DNA of 63,946 nucleotides, the filler included, from Octopus bimaculoides (taxonomy: Eukaryota): NCBI RefSeq assembly GCF_001194135.2. It is 7 parts of 7 records of this genome, joined end to end, with 100 filler letters (N's around TTAATTAATTAA, not from the genome) between each part and the next. Parts side by side here need not be neighbours in the genome. Positions count along the whole stretch, not along the records: positions 44,396 to 56,588 come from NW_026325016.1; 6 more parts are not named here. The stretch is one strand, 5' to 3'. Each line of letters begins with the position of its first letter. The stretch's first letter is position 1. This document shows, piece after piece, positions 44,396-56,588 of this stretch. The notes below the pieces were generated by a model. That model searched no databases, was not told the DNA's origin, and saw nothing but the letters and a program-made list of their open reading frames with translations. The position numbers and the translations under genes are program-made.

Positions 44396-45086
44396 CATCT
44401 CTCCCTCCGGAGGAGGAGGGGGGCTCTTCCACAACCAACTGTTCCAGGACCATACTCTGGTCCTGGGAACAGTTCTTTTTAATGTGGCCCGGTTCCAGGC
44501 ACAGGTGACACTTGGGGTGGGGGCGTCCCTCAAGTATCACCGGTTACCTGCAACCGGCCATTTAAAAAAAATCTGGAAAGACCAGATTCTTGACTGATTG
44601 GGTCCACAGGGTCAAAACAGCTTTTGACCCAATCCAATCAGCCGCCGGCAAAGTTTTAACATTAAGCAGCTTGGATCCGCTGCCACCCAGATCCCGGCGG
44701 ATAGTGTCTTCTATCCACTGGGGTTCTATCCTGGGTGGCAACCCGCAGGCCCAAGCTCTTGTCAACTTCTTCCCACCATACGTGGAAAGAAAGAAAATCT
44801 CTTTGCCCTCTAAGGGCTGGCTCGCAAATTTGGAAGCCTCCTCAAGGGTGTCAAATAGCAACCATACCGTTGCATACTTGACCCCCCCCCCTGGAGATGA
44901 ATTTAATAGTTGGCAAATACTCTGCCAAGTCTTTTTTTCAATTTTTGTCTTTTGAAAGAGGGCGATGGTGTCGAGCAACTTTGAGTAAGTCCTTAACACC
45001 ACCGTCCTCTCTTCAAAGTCTTTCATCCACTGTTTGGGTAGGACAATCTCCCACTCCAACGTAGTGTTGTTTATCTTTTTTGCCAT
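44396..45086 (-). mobile_element. Tx1/L1-type LINE ORF1 with CCHC zinc knuckle (frameshifted, cut by scaffold end)
   Basis: 174-aa ORF (…TRAWACGLPPRIEPQWIED…) then ILEGRPHPKCHLCLEPGHIKKNC (CX2CX4HX4C); putative 5' UTR to ~45580. Confidence 0.7.
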
Positions 45087-45832: not shown

Positions 45833-48020
45833 TTAACCAACTATTCACTAAACTATAAATCAAGTATATTAACTCGAAATTAAAATCTTTACTGAACTAT
45901 AACCTGAGCTAAATTGTACTAAACTATAATCTAAATTAAATACTCAACTCTCTGTAGTATTTAAAATCTCACGGTAAAACTTATAAATAAAGTAACTATC
46001 GGTATCAGCAATAACAACATTTGCACCAAACCCCATGTCACTACAACATCAAATAATATGTCCATTCTTAGTGAATTGCCATTCAAATTCCTGCAATATA
46101 TTTCTCGAGAATTCACATCAGAAACGACACAGGAGACAGAAAAAAACAGAACGANNNNNNNNNNNNNNNNNNNNNNNNNNNNNNNNNNNNNNNNNNNNNN
46201 NNNNNNNNNNNNNNNNNNNNNNNNNNNNNNNNNNNNNNNNNNNNNNNNNNNNNNNNNNNNNNNNNNNNNNNNNNNNNNNNNNNNNNNNNNNNNNNNNNNN
46301 NNNNNNNNNNNNNNNNNNNNNNNNNNNNNNNNNNNNNNNNNNNNNNNNNNNNNNNNNNNNNNNNNNNNNNNNNNNNNNNNNNNNNNNNNNNNNNNNNNNN
46401 NNNNNNNNNNNNNNNNNNNNNNNNNNNNNNNNNNNNNNNNNNNNNNNNNNNNNNNNNNNNNNNNNNNNNNNNNNNNNNNNNNNNNNNNNNNNNNNNNNNN
46501 NNNNNNNNNNNNNNNNNNNNNNNNNNNNNNNNNNNNNNNNNNNNNNNNNNNNNNNNNNNNNNNNNNNNNNNNNNNNNNNNNNNNNNNNNNNNNNNNNNNN
46601 NNNNNNNNNNNNNNNNNNNNNNNNNNNNNNNNNNNNNNNNNNNNNNNNNNNNNNNNNNNNNNNNNNNNNNNNNNNNNNNNNNNNNNNNNNNNNNNNNNNN
46701 NNNNNNNNNNNNNNNNNNNNNNNNNNNNNNNNNNNNNNNNNNNNNNNNNNNNNNNNNNNNNNNNNNNNNNNNNNNNNNNNNNNNNNNNNNNNNNNNNNNN
46801 NNNNNNNNNNNNNNNNNNNNNNNNNNNNNNNNNNNNNNNNNNNNNNNNNNNNNNNNNNNNNNNNNNNNNNNNNNNNNNNNNNNNNNNNNNNNNNNNNNNN
46901 NNNNNNNNNNNNNNNNNNNNNNNNNNNNNNNNNNNNNNNNNNNNNNNNNNNNNNNNNNNNTTATACTTGGTCGGTAGACATGAGAATATTTTCATTTTCA
47001 GCTTACATAGTTGTATTTAAGATATTTATGTGGTGAAATATATTAGCCAAATATTCAAGCTTTTGAGATCAAAAATTTATTTCGAAAAAGTTCTTTAAAA
47101 GAAGAAAATGAAAAACGAGGAGGAGGGGTGGGAGGAGGAGGAGGGGTGAGAGGAGGAGGTGGTTATCTTAATCATTTTTTTTTTTTACAAACGAATACAG
47201 AACCCTTAATAGAGCTTACTACCAATGAAAAAGCTCCATTAGTACAAATTCCAAGATAATATCCATTTGTTGATGTTGTTATTTTGAGTGCGTGATACTA
47301 TTACCGGGGCATATTTACTGCAAGTTAAATACCTCTTCTTCTCTGGCTGCTTCCTACAAGATCCAAATGGATTCATTAAATTTTGAAGTCGACTAGCAGG
47401 CTGTCTTAATGCAGACACCCGTTTCTTGGGCATGTCTGTCACGTGCAGACAGTTACAGAATTTTCCTCGTCGCCGTTTCTTTCTGACAGTCCCAGTGCAT
47501 CTTGGCGACAATAATCATATTACTGGTGCAGCCACAAGTTAGAGTCACAGACTCGGCAGGGGTTTCAATCCTGCATCATTTTGCAGGTGAATTCGTGTTC
47601 TGAGTTTTCTTCGGTTTCTGGGAAAATTCATTAGGCTGCAAGTGACCGCAACAGATTTGCCTACCCATGATCGTGAATGTTATTTGTGTTGCTTTACGTG
47701 CGTGACAAAACATCACACATAAGGTGTTTAATTGACATAAGTATCTAAATTCCTATACTATCTCTCATTTTTGAACAGGAGATAAAAAACGGATATATGT
47801 CATCGGAAACTTACCGAACTGTATGAAAACACTGTATACCCAATTGAGACAGAATGAAACTAAAATCGCCACCTGTGTATCATTATAAATCTACTTACAC
47901 CGATATAAGGCAAGGCATGATGCTTGTAATTGTCTGAGATAGAATCTCAGCATACTAATACATCTGTTTGTTGTCTACACCACCTGCCTTCGTCTTCTGT
48001 TTTTTTTGTGTGAATTCTCT

Positions 48021-48090
<70 letters not shown>

Positions 48091-48110
48091 TTATATATAA
48101 ATATTATATA

Positions 48111-49673
48111 CAGTATCTCACAGAAGTATGTACACCCCTAAAAAAATTCAGTAAAATTGCCATTACTCTGATAATATTGAGGGAAATCAAACGAAATTTA
48201 TACTGAATAAAATATATTATACATGCAAGCATTATACAAATTTGGAACACAAAGCAATAAACATTTTCAAATATATGAACGAAATATTAATTTTCAAACG
48301 ATACAAAATTATGTACCCACTAAAAGATTATTATTTATATTCAATATTTGGTGAGACCGCCATTGCTTTCAGTGACTGTATTGAGTCTTCTGGGCATAGT
48401 GTCAACTAAACTTTTGCATATAACCGATGAAATCTACCTCTATTTCTCCTGAATGATACCTTTCAACTGTGTTACATTGCGGGGTTCTTTCTCCTCACCT
48501 TCCTTTTCAAAACACCCCACAGATGTTCTAATGAGTTTAAATCAGGTAACATGGTAGGCCAAGGCAATGGCTTCACCTTTTTTATCTGATAAAATCTTAG
48601 TCGTCATCTTTGAAGTGCGTTTAAGGTCATTATCATGTTGGACCATGGAACGTCTTCCTAGTTTCTGCAATGTCACAATAAAGTCTTGAATCCATTGTTC
48701 TCTCAATAAATGTAAGTCCCCCCCACACCAGCCTCACCCATGCATCCCCAAAGCATAACATTTCCGCCGCCGTGTTTCACGGTAGGCACGGTGCATTTGT
48801 CGCTATTATCTTCACCTGGTTATCACCATACTCGTTTAATACCACCTGACCCAAACAAGTTGATTTTAGTCGCGTCAGATAAAAGAATTTTATTCCAAAA
48901 CTCCTTCACCTTACTGACATAGGTTTCGGCAAAAATAGATGACTTCATTTATGCCTGGTCATGAGGAGAGGCCTCCTACGAGGAATGCGTCCATAAAGAC
49001 CGCACTGATTCAAACTTCGGCGAACTGTTTGGGCGGATACACCTTTCCAATAACGTTGGATGTGGCGAATATCACGCGCAGTTAAAATAGAAGGACGACA
49101 TGGAGACCTGGACGATGTTTATTGCTTAGCCGTCCAGTAGCTTTGTACTTCTGAGTTACTTTGGTAACTGTGTTTGCGCTAATACGTATTCGTTTGCTAA
49201 TTAACTTGTGTCCTAAACCTTCTTGTGCAAATTAAAAATAATTTTCTTCAAATCTTCTGACAATTCGTTTCCTTTTGGTGACATTTTAATCAGAATGATT
49301 TTCACCATGGTACACAAATCAGAATTCTTGCAGATGCAATAACAATGATCAGCGCAAAAATGCCAGGAAAAATAATTTATTAGTATTGAAATTATCAGCA
49401 ATATCTGAATTTAGTAAAAACAAAAAAGTGGATAAAATATTGAATATAGCAAATTTCCTTTAGGGTGTACATATTTTTGTAACGTTTGAAAATTAATATT
49501 TCGTTCATATCTTTGAAAATGTTTATTGTTTTGTGCACCAAATTTGGATAATGTTTGCATGTATAATATATATTATTCAGTATAAATCTCGTTTGATTTC
49601 CTTCAATATTATCACAATAATGCCAATTTTACTGAAATTTGTTTAAGAGTGTACATACTTCTGTGAGATACTG
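48111..49673 (-). mobile_element. Full-length Tc1-family transposon, ~225-bp IR/DR-type TIRs, TA target duplication, dead transposase
   Basis: TA-CAGTATCTCACAGAAGTATGTACAC...GTGTACATACTTCTGTGAGATACTG-TA; MSPKGNELSEDLKK, ILLSDATKINLFGS, TVKHGGGNVMLWGCM, QHDND, PDLNSLEHLW. Confidence 0.95.
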
Positions 49674-49982
49674 TATATATTTATATATTCTTTTGTTAGT
49701 TATACTTTAGCGTTTGAAACTGTTGAATTTGTTCCAGTCTATAAGATTTATACTTTCTAAGTCATTCGACACGAGTTGGAGTCGTTCTATTTATTTTTTG
49801 CATTTGTCTCAATATGCTTAATGAGATAGTTTACTAAACGATTCAGCAGCGCTTCTACTCTCTTGCTATAACAACGTTTTTACTTTGTCGCTCTGTTTGT
49901 CTTCTGGATTTGAAAGTTAATTCTAAATGCTTACTAATCGTCTCTTACGTTTGTGTGTATATTTGTATACATATATGTATTA

Positions 49983-50024
<42 letters not shown>

Positions 50025-50084
50025 CGTGCGTGCGTGTGTGTGTGAGTATATGTTTGTATATATAAATATGTGTGTCTATGTTTG

Positions 50085-50270
50085 TGCTTGTTCCTCATCG
50101 TCACTTAACAAACTGTGTTGCTTTGTTTATGTCCCCGTAAATTAAGCGGCTCGACATAAAGAGATCGATAGAATAAGTACCGAACTTAAAAATAAGAACT
50201 GGGATCAATCTGTTCAACAAAACTTTGAAAGTTGTGTTCCAGCGTGGTCGCAGTCCAAGGATTAAAACAA
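50085..50270 (+). mobile_element. SINE 3' part
   Basis: GTTTATGTCCCCGTAAATTAAGCGG...GATAGAATAAGTAC...CCAGCGTGGTCGCAGTC. Confidence 0.65.
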
Positions 50271-50769
50271 GTTACCACGAAGCTCTGTTAATGTTTGCAT
50301 TGACATTTTACCTTGTTCCTTCATTGATCAACCTATGCTTTTTTTAGATATGGTCATTTTTTTCAACTGCTCTTGGTCATTTGTTTCTTTGATAAGTTTT
50401 TCGAGATGCCCGACAAAAGTAATAGGCGTCGATATCAGAAACTACACACTAATTCATATGTTGGAATAAGGAAGTGATGTTTGCTTATAGTTAAACTATC
50501 TCGACAAGAATATAGGTCTGGAGGGTGAAGAGAATCTAGTAGTGACCTGGAGCATTATTAAACAACAGTTTTGTGCTCAAGATCATGTTCTTCACAATAT
50601 CTTCCCGCTGCTACACAAAAGTATGATACAAACTCCATTTTGAAATTTTCTATTGTCATCTAGTTCTATCAATTTAATGTCCAAATCACAGGCAGATGCA
50701 TTTCTGATGTTTTCCTTATTAGTTCATTGGTTTAAATTGTTTCTTGTAGTATAACTACTAAGTAGTCTA

Positions 50770-51270
50770 GTACTTATGTTGAAAAACGATATTTTCTGAT
50801 CTTAGACATAGAGGCTGGCTTTTATTTCTTTTCAGGTGATAAAAGTGTGGAGTAAGTTTCTTTTCCAGAAAGTGGTCTACGATGAAACAGAGACAACTTC
50901 TGGGAAAGAAGACAGTTAAGGAACTTCTCCATACTTTCAAAAGTATTATCAAGCACGGCAGCTAATATCCCCAACCTCTAACTTGAATATACATGTCGTG
51001 AAGGGTAGCTGCCACGTTTTATTATACTTTTAAGAATCTCGAAAACTTTCTTGACTATTTGGGTGCCTAAGAATTTCCAGTTTCATTAGAGATACTGATG
51101 CTGTGTAGGTGACACCGTTGGTTTGCTTCTATCAAACAGATCTCTGCCAGCTGTGAATCTTTCCGAATTATTGACACTTTCATATTTTTAGATTTTTAAA
51201 GATGCTCCTTGCTCTTCCATGATGAAGATTGACTTAGCAGTTTTGTTTCTTCCACCAATGTCGCAAGTAT
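50770..51270 (-). mobile_element. Tigger/pogo transposase relic
   Basis: IME.ARSIFKNLK...RFTAGRDLFDR (CENP-B HTH end) and TTFWKRNLLHTFIT*KE (after the DET motif), with frameshifts. Confidence 0.55.
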
Positions 51271-51500
51271 ACCTACCATTTTCCCATAAATATTACTCTT
51301 TCAACAAGTCAACTTCTTTACTGATAACCATGAGGTTATCATAGCAGAAGCTTATATTTTGTCCGCATTCTTCTCACGGTGAGTCTAATCGTTGACGTGT
51401 CCCAGTTTAAAGGCTTACTAACATATAACTGACGTTCGTGATCGTCCAGTCACTTCAACCCTTGCAATCTAAGATGTGACTTTACCTCGACACATTAGGT

Positions 51501-51780
51501 CAGTGGTTCCCAGATATTTTCAGGTTGCCGCTCCCTTGGCAAGCAGGCCACTTTCCTAGCGCCCCGCCTCTTCCTCATCACCACCACAAATATGGACTTA
51601 TTTTTTCAGCAAATTCAGAACAACTGTATTTTATAAATATTACTTAACCTAATTAACCCATTTTTTAAATATACACTGCTCGCTTTTGGTTAAACCATTA
51701 TCGCTCCACTTTTCTTCAACGCTCCCTGGATCTTTTCACTGTCTCCAGCAGGGCAGTACTGCCCACTGTCGGAACCACTG
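51501..51780. mobile_element. 280-bp hAT (Buster/Charlie-type) MITE
   Basis: TIRs CAGTGGTTCC / GGAACCACTG; 8-bp TSD CATTAGGT / CATTAGAT with central TA. Confidence 0.85.
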
Positions 51781-52126
51781 CATTAGATGAACTTTCGCTT
51801 CAAGTTTCACATTTATGCGGTAGCAGACAGTTTAACAGTAACGAAAAAGCTCAAGTTTTTAGTCATCTTTCGTTTGCTTTTCTTATCCTTTCTATAGTTA
51901 TGCATTTTTTTGCACTACAAATTTTATTCGCCCTTCAGATTGTTATTACCAGTGCTTGCTTCAGGTGTGACTCAAGGATGGGGACTTTCACACCAAGGTA
52001 TGCAACTGTACAGTCTTTGATGAGTTTATCTAATATATATAGTTTTCCATCCATGGCTACATACACACACCTGCTCATACGCACACTTGCTCATACACAC
52101 ACCTGCTCATACACACACCTGCTCAT

Positions 52127-52157
<31 letters not shown>

Positions 52158-52369
52158 AGGTTTCCTTTTAGTGTTTGACCGTTACTTTAAAATGGTACAG
52201 TACACACAACCCGAAAACCATGCTCTACCCTGTGCGTATTCCTTATTCAAACTCCCATCTCTAAGTACAAAAACAGCAAAAACAGTCCCTTATTCCGCTC
52301 ATTAAGCTCCCAGTTTTCAAGCGAAAATTTACTGGTATGTAGAGTTTCTTTCTGTATTATTTCTTACCC

Positions 52370-53420
52370 GTCCTGTGATACTTAAAAATGGCTAACATTG
52401 TTTCCTGCAATTTGGAAACAAAGGTCCAGAGATTAGCTTGAAAAAGGAGAATATGTGTTTCCCTTCCTTGAAGCTTTAAATTTAGTTTATTCAGCTGGTC
52501 GAAAATGTCAAGGTACGCAACCCTTTTATTCCATGCTTCATCTTCGAAGTGAGCTACAAGATCTTTCTTTTCTTGAACCTCCAGGAATAGCTTTATTTCA
52601 TCTTTCATCTTTCATCTGGAAGACACGATTAACAACATGCCCTTTCTATAACCAACATACTTCTACGTAGAAAAGAAGGACTTCGTGGTCAGTATTCATG
52701 TCTTTACGTAGTTCTTTGAATAGCCGCGTATTGAGTGCTGCAGCTTTCACATAATTTACAATTTTGATTACAGAATCAAGCACTTCCTGCAAAGAGGCAT
52801 GGAGAGTCTTACTGACGAGAACATATCGGTGGATCATGCAGTGGATACCTTTGACTTGATGTACTAGCTTCTTCATTCTCGACAAGACTTCTGACTTCGA
52901 TCCCAGCGTAGCCAGTACTCCATCCGTACAAAACCCACACGTTTTCCCGTTGAAGGCCTTCCTCATGGAAAAAATTTTAAACTTTTACCATGACATCATC
53001 AGATTTTGTAGTGGTTTCAAGTGCACTGCAGAACAAGAATTCGTCTTTAATGTCACCTGAATGATTGTATCTCACGAAGACAAGCGACTGAGAACATGAA
53101 CTTACATCTGTTGACTCGTCGAGCTCAAAGGAGAACAGAGACGCCTTGATTTTGGTCAGAACCTACTCCTTCACATCCATAGACATTTTAGAAATGCGCC
53201 TCTTTATAGTAATATTTGACGGGACTACTTGCTGCATCTTCTTTTCACTGGCTTCTCCAAGAATAAGATTTACTGCTTTCAATATGCATGGTTTTAGAAG
53301 AATTTTTCCAATCGTGTGACACTTTTTTTCTTTAGCAATTTCCAATGCAATTTCATATGAGGCTTCCACTAAGGCTGGTGAATACGGACTTGTCTTTCCA
53401 GGGGCAAAGTTAAAAGTTCT
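52370..53420 (-). mobile_element. hAT Buster/Charlie-type transposase relic
   Basis: EASYEIALEIAKEKKCHTIG, FELDESTDVSSCSQRLVFVRY, CTDG, HCMIHR, LFYVEVCWL, AYL-DIFDQLNKLNLKLQG; stops and frameshifts. Confidence 0.92.
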
Positions 53421-54473
53421 CCCAAACGACTTGGTTAATGAATTATTCTTTTATTATTTCGTAATCCTTCAGCGTAGCACAAAATATAGATTTGCGATTC
53501 TTAAATTATTTGCTAGGGGCTATTTACAATATTGACCATGTATAGTTCTGACAACTACATCATTTCAAAGTTCACCTAGTGACAGTGTTGACTGATATTT
53601 GTTCATGTTGCCGTCCAATTCTTCAACATCAGTCATGAAGACAAAAATGTTAAGATGATACTATAAGATATAAGTTTAGCAGTTGTTATGTATTCCAAAG
53701 TCAATATCAATAAACAAAAGAAAGTGGGGTATGATGTGAGGGATATTCGGTTGTTATTTGTAGCTATATGAATAACACAGCCAAAAAGTGGATTGAAGAA
53801 GGGCATTGTTGGGATGAAGAACAGATCTGGTAGGTTGCAGAAAGCTCCTGAGAAGGCAAAGAATGCAGCTAAGAAAAAAAAGCATGAAACATGAATGTGT
53901 AACTGAAAGCGAGGTTCTAACTTCTATGGATATTTTGCCACATTGTGTAAGAACAGCACTGAAAATCCTTGGATATGAGCAAAGAGTTGCAAGAAATAAG
54001 CCAATGATTTTAAAATCCAATACGACCAAAAGTTTCAGCTGAACTAAAATGTTCTGTAACAAAGAAAACAAATGTTACTTATCTATAATATGGTCTAATA
54101 ACAGCAATTCCTGCCAGTTTTTGCAATTCTATGCAGATATATATTGTGGTTCGTCTTTCGGTGGTGGAATGGATCAGATATAATTATAATTTTTAACATA
54201 ACCACAAAACTGCAACCTTATGATGAAGAAATAGTTGATTAAAATCTACTTCAGTATTTAATTAGTGCTTATTTTACCAATCTGAATATGCTTGAACACT
54301 GAACGGAAATATACATAACTGAATACAGCTAGACATTTTGTTTACTGTTTCATTAATTGTGCCATTAGCAGCTGTTGTATATATATTCATATTAACAGCA
54401 ACAGTAAAATGGTAGTGATGATATTACTACTACTATCACAGTACGATACCGAAATGACTGTCACATTCATTGA

Positions 54474-54481
54474 TGACGTCA
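54474..54481. promoter_or_regulatory. Palindromic CRE (TGACGTCA) ~90 bp upstream of ATG 54571
   Basis: ATGACGTCAT at 54473-54482; motif only. Confidence 0.25.
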
Positions 54482-54570
54482 TAGTTGAAAGTGAATCATT
54501 ATTGAATAATTTAGTTTTATTTCTCTGCATTGAGAATCAATTTGAATTGACCAGCACGAATACCACAGAA

Positions 54571-56588
54571 ATGGCTGACCGTTCACAATATCCAGACGAA
54601 TTAGAGCTTGCTAGATCACGTCAGCTACACAGTCCACAATATGCATCAGAATATCACTTCAATGTAAGACCATCACACCTACATCGAAATTTACTAGAAC
54701 CTGACAATGCAGATCAAGCACAGGGATCATCATATGCATCAGCACGTCGTTCCATGTCTCCGTATTTGTCACGACATTCTCTACCACGCTGGAGCAGATC
54801 AATGCCATCATTTCGAGATGATTTATATCGCACTTATCCATTGAGTCTTGCAACTCGTACAGAACAGGCACCCATATTTCTACATAATTTAACCTATCAA
54901 GGGTACCCTACTGCCTACACAACACCATCACCGCATGGACCGCAACGTCTATCTGAACAACAAGTATCTCCTCTCGTAACATGGGACCCTGATACTTCGA
55001 GACGGAGTCGTGATATTTCAAGGTATGAGCCAAGCACGCCATCAGAATATAGGGCGAGAAGTTTTCATAGATTCAGTACATCACCGATAGAAGAAACAGA
55101 ATACCGTCATGCTCTCTTGGATAGCTTTAGGCATAGCACACCACAACGACAGAGAACATCAAGTTTTCGTATCAGAAGTCCATTAACATTTCGTCATCAT
55201 CGTAGTTCGAGTTCTGAACAAAGCCCATCGTCCCGATATTCGTTACCAAGACCACTTCGAAGCAGGTCAGAGGAATATAGGGTACGTGACTTTCAAACAA
55301 CAGATACAATTTCTGATCTTGGAGAATTTGTAAATCTAGTATCTCCTGACACTTCGAGAAGGACTCGTGATGCTGACGACTATTTAGCAGCATTCGGAGA
55401 AGAGGCACATAATCTAGATTCGTCAAGTGGGTCATGTTTTTCAGATTTTATCGGTGAAGTTGAACCTCTGTCAGCGAATGAAATAAGGTCTCATCCTTTA
55501 AACAGACTGTGGGATAGAGCATTTTATCGGCGATATCCTCGAAGCCAGAGAGTTGCGGCAATTAGACATGAAATGCCAAACATTGAACAGTGTGTATTCG
55601 AACAACAAATACCTCTTGACGCAACGCGGGATTCTGACACAACGCGGGATCCTGACACAACGCGGGACACTGATGTAATGCGGGACCCTGACACTTCCAG
55701 ACGAGACCTTGCCATTTCCAGACGAGACCCTGACACTTCCAGAGGAGACCCTGACACTTCCAGAGGAGACCCTGACACTTCCAGAGGAGACTCTGACACT
55801 TCCAGAGGAGACCCTGACACATCCAGACGAACTCGTGATTCTGAAGAATCTTTGGCAGCATTTGGAGAAGATGCACGTAGTCCAGATTCGTCAAGTGGTA
55901 CATGTTTTTCAGATTATATCGGTATAACAGAACCTCTGTCCGCGGAGGAAATAAGGTCTCACCCCTTAAACAGAGTATGGGNNNNNNNNNNNNNNNNNNN
56001 NNNNNNNNNNNNNNNNNNNNNNNNNNNNNNNNNNNNNNNNNNNNNNNNNNNNNNNNNNNNNNNNNNNGATCCTGAAACAACGCGGGACACTGATGCAACG
56101 CGGGACCCTGACACTTCCAGAGGAGACCCTGACACTTCCAGAGGAGACCCCGACACTTCCAGAGGAGACCCTGACACTTCCAGAGGAGACTCTGACACTT
56201 CCAGAGGAGACCCTGACACTTCCAGACGAACTCGTGATTCTGAAGAATCTTTGGCAGCATTTGGAGAAGATGCACGTAGTCCAGATTCGTCAAGTGGTAC
56301 ATGTTTTTCAGATTATATCGGTATAACAGAACCTCTGTCCGCGGAGGAAATAAGGTCTCACCCCTTAAACAGAGTATGGGATAGAACATTTTATCGGCGA
56401 TATCCTCGAAGCCAGAGAGTTGCGGTAATTAGACATGAAATGCCAAACGTTGAACAATGTGTATTTGAACAACAAATATCTCCTGACGCAACGCGGGATT
56501 CTGACACAACGCGGGATCCTGAAACAACGCGGGACACTGATGCAACGCGGGACCCTGACACTTCCAGAGGAGACCCTGACACTTCCAG
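54571..56588 (+). CDS. Uncharacterised lysine-free R/S/D/T/P-rich protein with nested tandem repeats; C-terminus missing
   Basis: Stop-free frame from 54409 to the scaffold end (one 86-N gap); GAAATGG context at 54571; three ~75-aa modules separated by TRDPDT/RGDPDTS repeats; no Lys. Confidence 0.75.
55346..56588 (+). repeat. Higher-order coding tandem repeat (~450-bp units containing 18- and 21-bp subrepeats)
   Basis: CCCTGACACTTCCAGAGGAGA (21 nt) and ACGCGGGATCCTGACACA (18 nt) subunits; 55822-55981 identical to 56221-56380. Confidence 0.95.

What the first reader, a model, noticed from the sequence alone, without database searches (positions are those of the whole stretch)
54571..56588. 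A ~640-residue lysine desert in an unannotated open reading frame
Seen: the ORF track has no K anywhere from 54409 to the scaffold end, including ~260 non-repetitive residues (54571-55345), although AAA/AAG codons are easy to generate in AT-rich DNA; Arg is abundant instead. Known: long Lys-free disordered regions occur in ubiquitin-system proteins (e.g. San1, BAG6, RNF126/RNF115, RLIM/RNF6) and protect them from self-ubiquitination. Inference: Lys is being selected against, and the missing C-terminus may carry a RING or other ubiquitin-system domain.
Basis: partly seen in the sequence, partly recalled or inferred. Interest (0 to 1): 0.8.

Follow-up and report, generated by a model that had tools for sequence, protein, structure and literature searches.

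The report
Lysine-free octopus repeat-protein gene
The lysine-free reading frame is real and is a protein-coding gene. It belongs to a fast-evolving, Octopus-only family of arginine/serine/aspartate-rich repeat proteins, and its full-length counterpart in another octopus ends without any ubiquitin-system domain, so the "desert" is mainly a family composition trait and not a sign of a hidden E3 ligase.

Summary
Observation confirmed. The frame from 54409 to the end of the piece has 0 Lys in 697 read residues. The 259 non-repetitive codons alone should hold about 10 Lys (P≈4e-5). The 86-N gap does not break the frame.

The ORF is a single-exon gene, probably starting at ATG 54571. It has a unique N-terminal region followed by tandem 149–156-aa units. 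It sits in a cluster of Octopus-only paralogues with no Pfam or PDB match.

The orthologous O. sinensis locus gives the complete protein: 1453 aa, ending in a stop after more repeat units. It has no RING, no Cys/His cluster, 8 Lys (0.55%) and 160 Arg. Paralogues carry a Lys-rich head and a Lys-poor Arg/Ser tail; this gene has lost the head.

Amino-acid evolution is near neutral (dN/dS ≈ 1.15), yet no stop codon has arisen (6 expected in 349 codons). Lys appears at the neutral rate on the O. sinensis branch (4 seen, 4.0 expected). Lys is absent from older divergences (0 seen, 4.7 expected), and paralogue P0006 has 377-, 191- and 154-aa Lys-free runs.

Verdict: a real, conserved but leaky Lys depletion in a disordered Arg-based repeat protein. 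The ubiquitin-ligase inference is not supported. The reason for avoiding Lys is unresolved.

The parts
54116..54570 (+). Conserved upstream region, taken to be promoter and/or 5' UTR. It includes a palindromic CRE-like TGACGTCA at 54474-54481. It is probably not coding, although it is in frame with the ORF.
   Evidence: It is about 77% identical to the upstream region of paralogue L001, with indels that are not multiples of three. Copies lie upstream of other paralogues. Window 54368-54567 is 97% identical to O. sinensis, against about 86% for the CDS. No ATG lies between the CRE and 54571.
54571..55347 (+). Probable start codon (MADRSQYPDEL; A at -3, G at +4) and the non-repetitive N-terminal region of 259 codons with 0 Lys.
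   Evidence: The N-terminus MADxSQYPD is shared by all paralogues. Composition and Lys statistics are. dN/dS against O. sinensis is 0.7 for aa 1-150 and 1.84 for aa 150-255. AF2 pLDDT is 45.
54976..55014 (+). First copy of the family signature motif VTWDPDTSRRSRD.
   Evidence: This is the most conserved motif across the family: P0001, P0002, P0005, P0006 and P0007.
55330..55620 (+). Repeat unit 1, the conserved ~95-aa module: PDTSRRTRD...AFGE...SSSGSCFSDFIGE...LSANEIRSHPLNRLWDRAFYRRYPRSQRV..IRHEMPNIEQCVFEQQ.
   Evidence: Alignment A3 with P0001/P0002 shows 39-40% identity. The profile search found only Octopus proteins.
55617..55827 (+). Linker made of 18-nt (D-x-TTRD) and 21-nt (DPDTSRG) micro-repeats, all in frame.
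   Evidence: Tandem Repeats Finder rows at 55617-55694 and 55684-55827.
55804..55981 (+). Repeat unit 2, cut by the assembly gap.
   Evidence: It differs from unit 3 at 1 of 178 nt.
55982..56067 (.). Assembly gap of 86 N. By comparison with unit 3 the hidden sequence is 134 nt (or 134 nt plus whole units), so the frame is kept.
56068..56588 (+). Linker repeats, repeat unit 3 (56203-56487) and the start of the next linker. The ORF is cut here by the end of the piece, not by a stop.

Best explanation
The window holds the 5' two-fifths or so of a single-exon, protein-coding gene found only in the genus Octopus.

The product is an acidic, probably intrinsically disordered protein rich in Ser, Arg, Asp, Thr and Pro. 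It has a unique N-terminal region followed by tandemly amplified ~95-aa modules, joined by micro-repeat linkers whose copy number differs between species.

The gene is one member of a tandem cluster of paralogues that share a conserved upstream element and the N-terminus MADxSQYPD.

I infer three causes for the lysine desert:
1. The Arg/Ser-rich tail of this family has been Lys-poor for a long time. Arg is the only basic residue tolerated there.
2. This paralogue has lost the Lys-rich head that its relatives keep.
3. Lys-free units were then amplified.

Selection keeps the frame open and holds its composition, including a moderate, leaky bias against Lys. It does not hold the exact sequence.

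My inference is that the protein works through its composition and reiterated short motifs, as a multivalent Arg/aromatic/phospho-Ser scaffold. Lys is disfavoured because Arg-specific chemistry or avoidance of Lys modification matters in the tail. The gene is not a ubiquitin-system enzyme.
For: Coding and under selection:
- No stops arose where about 6 are expected in 349 orthologous codons, and 7-8 per deep comparison of repeat units. 8.3 are expected among 168 unit differences.
- All CDS indels against O. sinensis are 12 nt, except one 1-nt deletion that O. vulgaris lacks.
- The other frames of the same strand are full of stops.
- O. vulgaris annotates a 1378-aa gene here.

Sequence itself is unconstrained:
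- dN/dS is 1.15 (CI 0.76-1.86), and divergence is equal at the three codon positions.

Full-length orthologue:
- 1453 aa, 8 Lys, 160 Arg, a stop after seven short and two long units, and no Pfam family.

Family:
- All true hits are Octopus proteins without domains.
- The genes are clustered on one chromosome.
- Heads carry 9-15 Lys per 100 aa. Tails have Lys-free runs of 377, 278 and 153 aa.
- The window protein aligns to P0004 at its N-terminus (P0004 aa 23-33) and then from about P0004 aa 538 (also aa 366-411), and to P0006 residues 396-560. It skips the heads.

Lys avoidance:
- Composition models.
- 0 Lys seen against 4.7 expected in old differences.
- 2 seen against 6.3 expected among units.

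Disorder:
- The charge-hydropathy measure falls on the disordered side.
- AF2 pLDDT is 45-50.
Against: - No expression, localisation or function data could be obtained, so the scaffold mechanism is inference from composition only.
- Low AF2 confidence with a 1-5 sequence alignment is weak evidence for disorder. The C-terminal half of the module is predicted helical at low confidence and keeps invariant C/W/F/H positions, so it may fold.
- On the O. sinensis/vulgaris branch Lys was gained at the neutral rate (4 seen against 4.0 expected; 8 seen against about 8 expected for the whole ORF). Current selection against Lys may therefore be absent there.
- In the window lineage, 0 seen against 2.5-3.7 expected is only P=0.03-0.08.
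- All orthologue evidence comes from one full locus, which carries a frameshift, and one partial locus.
Confidence: 0.55

Rival explanations
1. One reading: a ubiquitin-system protein (RING or other E3, or a shuttle factor) whose disordered region is kept Lys-free to avoid self-ubiquitination, with the catalytic domain in the unassembled C-terminus.
For: The desert is long, non-random and in a probably disordered, Arg-rich region. That matches San1, Slx5, BAG6 and RNF6. Such deserts are enriched among ubiquitin-proteasome components (PMC10169902).
Against: - The complete O. sinensis orthologue ends in repeat units and a stop. It has no Pfam hit, no C..C pair, only 20 Cys in 1453 aa (two per unit) and no RING pattern.
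- Downstream DNA holds only low-complexity and reverse-transcriptase-like ORFs.
- No paralogue has a ubiquitin-system domain.
- Only 12% of the top human deserts are ubiquitin-proteasome components.
Confidence: 0.03
2. Not an enzyme, but adaptively Lys-less so that the protein escapes canonical ubiquitination or other Lys modifications. For example, a long-lived scaffold, or a protein in a host-pathogen or reproductive conflict. Loss of the Lys-rich head would have completed the escape in this paralogue.
For: - This paralogue replaced the Lys residues that are conserved in the shared module of its relatives: NRKW became NR[LV]W, among others.
- It lost the Lys-rich head.
- It has zero Lys in this species.
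- It evolves fast, with one segment at dN about twice dS and about 2.5 times the flank divergence.
Against: - O. sinensis and O. vulgaris tolerate new Lys at the neutral rate.
- Related proteins pair the Lys-poor tail with a Lys-rich head, so tail depletion predates any whole-protein escape and does not need it.
- No degradation data exist.
Confidence: 0.2
3. Translation starts at the upstream in-frame ATG (54409, MVVMILLLL...), which acts as a signal peptide. The product would then be a secreted or matrix protein whose RGD heptads bind integrins. Lys-free stretches are common in extracellular proteins.
For: - The hydrophobic MVVMILLLL lies in frame.
- The window has 10 RGD motifs.
- 65% of the top human deserts are membrane or extracellular-matrix proteins.
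- The O. vulgaris model starts at an upstream ATG, equivalent to window 54454.
Against: - The upstream stretch is conserved with paralogues at the DNA level, with frame-breaking indels and stops there.
- It is far more conserved (97%) than the CDS, which fits a regulatory region or UTR.
- O. sinensis has Pro substitutions in the hydrophobic run: LLPLP.
- The RGD heptads are absent from the O. sinensis units.
- Paralogue N-termini align to MADxSQ, not to the upstream stretch.
Confidence: 0.07
4. There is no functional protein. The ORF would be an accidental open frame in tandem-repeat DNA, or a decaying pseudogene, and the Lys lack a by-product of repeat composition.
For: - dN/dS is about 1, with equal divergence at the three codon positions.
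- There is a 1-nt deletion in O. sinensis.
- Much of the ORF is repeat, and the antisense frame is also open for 275 codons.
Against: - No stops against about 6 expected per 349 codons since the species split, and about 12 expected for the whole O. sinensis ORF (P≈4e-6).
- Indels are multiples of three.
- The 259-codon unique part is open and Lys-free too.
- The frame is kept in three species.
- The module keeps invariant residues across paralogues at 36-47% identity.
Confidence: 0.05

Closest known systems
Lysine-desert proteins of the ubiquitin-proteasome system (San1, Slx5, BAG6, UBQLN1/2/4, RNF6, RLIM/RNF12, RNF111)
   Same: A Lys-free stretch of several hundred residues, longer than most listed human deserts. 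It keeps Arg, lies in a probably disordered region, and is largely kept in the orthologue.
   Different: No RING, HECT, UBL or UBA domain in this gene, its complete orthologue or any paralogue. The orthologue gains Lys at the neutral rate. Sister proteins carry a Lys-rich head on the same chain. No homology to these proteins.
SR-related / RS-domain proteins (NCBI named the neighbouring paralogue XP_036359032.1 'serine/arginine repetitive matrix protein 2-like')
   Same: Composition rich in Ser and Arg and poor in Lys, low complexity, tandem repeats, probable disorder, and many R-x-x-S/T sites.
   Different: RS/SR dipeptides cover at most 28% of any 50-aa window, and there are only 40 dipeptides in 642 positions. 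There is no RRM or PWI domain. The protein is net acidic (D+E 114 against R 88). The NCBI name appears to reflect composition rather than detectable homology (my inference: no Pfam family in P0006).
Reflectins (cephalopod proteins that lack Lys, Ala, Ile and Leu; from my own knowledge of Crookes et al. 2004, not checked here)
   Same: Cephalopod-restricted repeat proteins rich in Arg, Asp and Tyr and lacking Lys, encoded in clusters of paralogues.
   Different: No reflectin motif (0 matches to [MF]D-x5-MD-x5-MD). Met is rare. Ala, Ile and Leu are present. No sequence similarity.
Taxon-restricted, tandemly duplicated, fast-evolving genes for disordered repeat proteins (general class)
   Same: Restricted to one genus, clustered paralogues, intronless CDS, repeat number varying between species, dN/dS about 1 or above, and no known domain.
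   Different: The complete absence of Lys in one paralogue is unusual within that class.

Membership tests
Lysine desert (descriptive class, as in PMC10169902) | A long stretch without Lys that is not simple repeat (passes a Shannon entropy filter) | tested here: met
   643 residues without Lys. The 259 unique residues have an entropy of 3.79 bits out of 4.32. The paper's exact cut-off is not known to me.
Lysine desert (descriptive class, as in PMC10169902) | The desert is conserved between species | tested here: inconclusive
   O. sinensis has 8 Lys in 1453 aa (0.55%), with a longest Lys-free run of 568 aa. The Lys residues are derived where polarity can be read, and were gained at about the neutral rate. 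Only Octopus species were available.
Lysine desert (descriptive class, as in PMC10169902) | The desert is exposed or intrinsically disordered | tested here: inconclusive
   The charge-hydropathy measure falls on the disordered side, and 55-57% of residues are disorder-promoting. AF2 pLDDT is 45-50, but from very shallow alignments.
Ubiquitin-system lysine-desert proteins (RING E3s such as San1, RNF6, RLIM; shuttles such as BAG6, UBQLN) | Presence of a RING, HECT, U-box, UBL, UBA or BAG domain | tested here: not met
   Pfam finds nothing in the window protein, the full-length O. sinensis ORF or the paralogues. The RING regular expression and the C..C count are both zero.
Ubiquitin-system lysine-desert proteins | Introducing Lys increases ubiquitination or turnover | not testable with these tools
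   This needs R-to-K variants expressed in cells, as in PMC10169902.
SR / SR-related proteins | An RS domain: a stretch of at least about 50 aa dominated by RS/SR dipeptides | tested here: not met
   The maximum coverage of any 50-aa window by RS/SR dipeptides is 0.28 in the window protein and 0.24 in O. sinensis.
SR / SR-related proteins | An RRM, PWI or other RNA-processing domain | tested here: not met
   No Pfam family.
Reflectins | Repeated reflectin motif [M/F]D-x5-MD-x5-MD | tested here: not met
   0 matches. The motif definition is recalled from memory.
Octopus 'MADxSQYPD / WDPDTSR' gene family (uncharacterised; defined here) | N-terminus MADxSQYPD, the motif [VT]-[TS]-W-D-P-D-T-S-R-x-S-R-D, and (in a subset) the module SCFSD[FY]...SH.LNR.W...MP.[IV]E | tested here: met
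   BLASTP E-values are 5e-18 to P0001 and 7e-25 to P0006. The profile search gave 1e-102 and 2e-42 to P0005 and P0002. The upstream element is shared, and the gene lies in the same cluster.

The most novel reading that the evidence does not exclude
An Octopus-specific, head-less paralogue has been driven to a completely Lys-free state as an adaptation. It would be a disordered Arg/Asp/Ser repeat protein that cannot be canonically ubiquitinated, acetylated or SUMOylated on Lys, in a gene family evolving at or above the neutral rate. Possible roles include a degradation-resistant scaffold or a player in a molecular conflict. That would make it a natural lysine desert outside the ubiquitin-proteasome system, with built-in 'leaky' controls in sister species.
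Probability: 0.2. Interest if true: 0.5.

Novelty: new member of a known kind. Interest (0 to 1): 0.3.

Why it matters
The locus is a cautionary example. A striking, statistically real lysine desert does not by itself point to a ubiquitin-system protein. Here the missing C-terminus could be read from a sister species, and it holds nothing of the kind.

The locus also documents an uncharacterised Octopus-only gene family. The family consists of clustered, intronless genes with a shared CRE-like upstream element. Its reading frames are kept open while the amino-acid sequence drifts at the neutral rate.

That makes it a compact natural system for asking what selection acts on in disordered repeat proteins: length, composition, or the choice of Arg over Lys.

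If the Lys avoidance proves adaptive, the species pair gives ready-made controls: zero Lys in this species against eight recent Lys in O. sinensis.

Tried and rejected
- **Pfam** on the window protein, the full O. sinensis ORF and the paralogues found nothing. The only rows were far below their curated cut-offs: DUF1641 at 15 bits and Invasin_D4 at 19 bits.
- **PDB profile search** with the repeat module found nothing.
- **AlphaFold2** of the module (5-sequence alignment) and of the N-terminal 259 aa (single sequence) gave pLDDT 50 and 45. This is too low for a fold search, so none was run.
- **Word-indexed protein searches.**
  - The 470-aa query found only P0001.
  - The 259-aa unique region found nothing, although an O. 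vulgaris orthologue is annotated.
  - As a result the O. vulgaris 1378-aa protein could not be retrieved. Only its first ~147 codons were read, from L006.
- **Profile search of 1.84 billion representatives** found 4 true family members, all Octopus (P0005, P0002, P0006, P0007). The three weakest hits were rejected as spurious: P0008 and P0009 are Tyr/Asn/Asp-rich repeat proteins, and P0010 is a Lys-rich repeat protein.
- **Literature searches** for the SRA runs behind L001-L004 and for the family accessions found nothing. The species of L001 and whether those contigs are DNA or RNA stay unknown.
- **Hyper-editing or A-to-G 'hard-wiring'** as the cause of Lys loss was considered and rejected. 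A is not depleted in the ORF: 25%, 29% and 37% at the three codon positions.
- **A pure GC effect** was considered and rejected. The position-specific composition model still predicts 3.8% Lys, while Asn and Ile are only mildly low.
- **A neuropeptide precursor** was considered and rejected: no signal peptide at MADRSQ.
- **The antisense 275-aa ORF** (55562-56389) is a by-product of the repeat. Its longest listed O. sinensis counterpart is only 112 aa.
Full report
**1.

The + strand frame that opens at 54409 runs to the end of the piece without a stop. It has no Lys in 697 determined residues. From ATG 54571 it has 88 Arg, 96 Ser and 77 Asp.

I tested the gap first, as asked. The 60 nt before the gap match repeat copy 3 at 60/60, and so do the 60 nt after it. 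In copy 3 these two matches are 134 nt apart. Both 134 and the 86 N equal 2 mod 3. After the gap only frame 0 is open: 0 stops against 4 and 21. The frame therefore continues, whether the gap is read as written or rebuilt from the repeat.

The absence of Lys is not a repeat or composition artefact.
- The 259 unique codons (54571-55347) should hold 10.0 Lys under a position-specific base-composition model. This gives P(0)=3.6e-5.
- All 643 codons should hold 24.6.
- The other two frames of the same strand carry 22 and 25 AAA/AAG codons.
- 164 of the 643 codons are one mutation away from a Lys codon.

Two caveats apply.
- The ORF is 45% GC against 37% upstream.
- Units 2 and 3 are almost identical, and the piece ends inside the array. 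The assembly has not resolved the array, so the repeat residues are not independent evidence.

**2. What the ORF is**

*Architecture*:
- a unique N-terminal region;
- a first copy of the motif VTWDPDTSRRSRD at 54976-55014;
- tandem units of 149-156 aa. Each unit has a ~95-aa module (PDTSRRTRD…AFGE…SSSGSCFSD[FY]IG…LSA.EIRSHPLNR.WDR.FYRRYPRSQRV..IRHEMPN.EQCVFEQQ) and a linker of in-frame 18-nt and 21-nt micro-repeats (D.TTRD, DPDTSRG).

Pfam finds nothing.

*Homologues are all from Octopus*:
- P0001: a complete 492-aa ORF on Logan contigs of an unidentified species;
- P0002, P0004 and P0005: O. vulgaris hypothetical proteins;
- P0003: O. sinensis LOC118763368 isoform X2;
- P0006: O. sinensis XP_036359032.1, named 'SRRM2-like';
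- P0007: O. bimaculoides A0A0L8H845.

The other hits of the exhaustive profile search are unrelated repeat proteins. None of the three paralogues scanned (P0004, P0005, P0006) has a Pfam domain. The module has no relative in the PDB.

*Orthologous loci.*
- The window is collinear with O. sinensis CM016863.1 (L005) at about 88-90% identity.
- It is also collinear with O. vulgaris OX597818.1 (L006) at about 91%.
- So it comes from a third Octopus species.
- In O. vulgaris a 1378-aa gene is annotated starting at the equivalent of window 54454.

*The gene lies in a cluster.*
- In O. sinensis two paralogues lie upstream and P0006 lies 11 kb downstream.
- In O. vulgaris one member is inverted.
- A second pair of paralogues lies at 51.6 Mb on the same chromosome.

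**3. The 'missing C-terminus' can be read, and it is not a RING**

In O. sinensis the ORF runs from L005 40667 to a stop at 45027, once a 1-nt deletion is allowed for. The window and O. vulgaris both lack that deletion.

The product is 1453 aa. It has the N-terminal region, seven short units (108-126 aa apart) and two long divergent units. It ends …QCLFQQQVIPPVARD*.

It has no Pfam family, no C..C pair, no RING pattern, and only 20 Cys, two per unit. Downstream DNA shows only low-complexity and reverse-transcriptase-like ORFs.

**4. Where the desert comes from**

*A Lys-poor tail is a family trait.*
- Paralogues have a Lys-rich acidic head, with 9-15 Lys per 100 aa.
- This is followed by an Arg/Ser-rich tail with long Lys-free runs: 377, 191 and 154 aa in P0006; 278 and 210 aa in P0007; 153 aa in P0005.

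*This paralogue has no head.*
- It keeps the shared start MADRSQYPD, matching P0004 aa 23-33.
- It then matches P0004 from about residue 538 (also 366-411). It aligns to P0006 residues 396-560 at 37% identity.
- P0006's 377-aa Lys-free run (residues 151-527) covers most of that aligned region.

*Lys was replaced inside the shared module.* Relatives keep Lys at conserved module positions (NRKW, RRKR/NLKL, VK..MP/VKPNIKQC). This gene has NR[LV]W, RRYPRSQR and IRHEMP in every unit in both species.

*Amplification multiplied the result.* Lys-free units were then copied many times.

**5. Is Lys being selected against?**

*The gene is under selection to stay open, but not for its sequence.*
- Against O. 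sinensis (349 codons), dS=0.111 and dN=0.128, so ω=1.15 (bootstrap 0.76-1.86).
- Differences are spread evenly over the three codon positions.
- With the observed divergence and transition/transversion spectrum, about 6 stop codons should have arisen in those 349 codons. About 12 should have arisen over the whole O. sinensis ORF on its own branch. None did.
- CDS indels are 12 nt.
- Among 168 unit-versus-consensus differences, 8.3 stops are expected and 0 are seen. Synonymous changes match expectation exactly: 44 against 44.1.

*For Lys the picture is mixed.*

| Comparison | Lys seen | Lys expected |
|---|---|---|
| Recent: window vs O. sinensis, 349 codons | 4 | 4.0 |
| Intermediate: units vs their consensus | 2 | 6.3 (P≈0.05) |
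| Old: N-terminal long unit vs O. sinensis unit 8 (d≈0.30) | 0 | 4.7 (P=0.009) |

- All four recent Lys are on the O. sinensis side. The first two are shared with O. vulgaris.
- All 8 O. sinensis Lys are singletons. They are derived wherever other units or paralogues give polarity, mostly by GAA→AAA.
- Eight over the whole ORF is what neutrality predicts.
- For the window lineage, 0 seen against 2.5-3.7 expected gives only P=0.03-0.08.
- Most of the homologous stretch of P0006 is also Lys-free, despite 63% amino-acid divergence.

New Lys therefore appear freely but have not persisted over long times. This fits weak purifying selection against Lys, or a relaxation specific to the O. sinensis/vulgaris branch. 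I cannot separate the two with the data at hand (note).

**6. Mechanism (inferred)**

The protein is probably disordered.
- The charge-hydropathy measure falls on the disordered side, and 55% of residues are disorder-promoting.
- AF2 pLDDT is 45-50 with almost no secondary structure in the N-terminal region. This is weak evidence, given the shallow alignments.

Selection seems to act on three things: an open frame, the composition, and a few reiterated motifs with invariant D-T-S-R, F-S-D, S-H, N-R-x-W.

Family members carry a Lys-rich head on the same chain as the Lys-poor tail. Escape of the whole protein from ubiquitination is therefore an unlikely family-level reason.

A region-specific need for Arg fits better. 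Candidate reasons are Arg-aromatic or phospho-Ser contacts, recognition by basophilic kinases, or condensate behaviour. PMC10169902 itself notes the Arg/Lys difference in phase separation.

For this head-less paralogue, complete Lys-lessness could still have become functional. I give that 0.2.

**7. Comparison with known classes**

The gene qualifies descriptively as a lysine desert. It fails the defining feature of the ubiquitin-system subclass, which is a ubiquitin-system domain.

In the human screen only 12% of the top 200 deserts are ubiquitin-proteasome components, and 65% are membrane or matrix proteins.

It is not an RS-domain protein: at most 28% RS/SR coverage in any 50-aa window, and no RRM. 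It is not a reflectin: the motif is absent.

It is a member of an uncharacterised Octopus gene family that I can define only by its own motifs and its upstream element.

**8. Verdict**

- The 'selection against Lys' reading is partly supported: it holds over deep time and leaks recently.
- The ubiquitin-ligase reading is not supported.
- The finding is a new member of a known kind, a lysine-desert disordered protein outside the ubiquitin system, in an orphan gene family.
- Interest is moderate to low, at 0.3.

The most informative next data would be transcripts, a long-read locus, more octopod orthologues, and polymorphism data.

Noticed in passing
window 54368-54570 (CRE-like TGACGTCA at 54474-54481): The ~200 nt before the start codon are 97% identical to O. 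sinensis and O. vulgaris. Further-upstream DNA is about 91% identical and the CDS about 86%. A 28-nt element, CATTCATTGRTGACGTCAYAGTTGAAAG, recurs exactly upstream of paralogues in both orientations: L001-L004, L005 1340(+), 24117(-), 40560(+), and L006 6568(-), 21500(+). It is probably a family promoter or 5'-UTR element with an ATF/CREB-type site.
   Followed up: partly
L005 about 40841 (equivalent to window about 54733): The O. sinensis assembly has a 1-nt deletion in codon 59 relative to the window and O. vulgaris. RefSeq LOC118763368 isoform X2 (P0003) joins the upstream paralogue's exon, 30 kb away, to this gene. It ends in the out-of-frame peptide MHHHVIPCLRIG...IVLIH. This is either an assembly error or a real lesion, and the model looks chimeric.
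   Followed up: partly
window 55684-55827 and 56104-56226: The 21-nt repeat encodes DPDTSRG. This creates 10 RGD tripeptides in this species. The O. sinensis units lack the heptad array and have no RGD there. So this is a species-specific micro-amplification of the family's DPDTSR motif, and the RGD is probably incidental.
   Followed up: partly
window 55020-55335 (aa 150-255 of the protein): This segment has dN 0.22 against dS 0.12, and about 0.08 divergence in the flanking non-coding DNA. Nonsynonymous changes number 47 of 244 sites, against about 85 per 1000 in the flank (Fisher P≈4e-6). Against its own synonymous sites the excess is not significant (P=0.15). It hints at positive selection or local hypermutability.
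   Followed up: partly
window 54571-56588 compared with 47000-54400: CpG observed/expected is 0.85-0.95 in the ORF against 0.70 upstream. The ORF is 45-50% GC against 37%. Composition is being held away from the background even though amino-acid changes look neutral.
   Followed up: no
window 55562-56389 (-): An antisense ORF of 275 codons (LLWKCQG repeats) runs through the repeat array. The longest O. sinensis counterpart in the ORF list is only 112 aa, so it looks like a by-product of the repeat.
   Followed up: partly
window 52646-52966 (-) and 53163-53369 (-): Two short minus-strand ORFs (106 and 68 aa) look to me like remnants of a transposase-type gene. Pfam found nothing. The DNA is conserved at the orthologous position in O. 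sinensis and O. vulgaris.
   Followed up: partly
window 46155-46960; 48024-48110; 52060-52157: A second, 806-N assembly gap lies at 46155-46960. Microsatellites lie in the upstream intergenic DNA: (TA)44 and CA-rich 16-nt repeats.
   Followed up: no
L001 1-540: The Logan contigs carrying paralogue P0001 appear in four or more runs with identical 3' ends. Their 5' ends vary inside a (TA)n tract, and they include the conserved upstream element. I could not decide whether they are genomic or transcript assemblies, and the species is unknown.
   Followed up: partly
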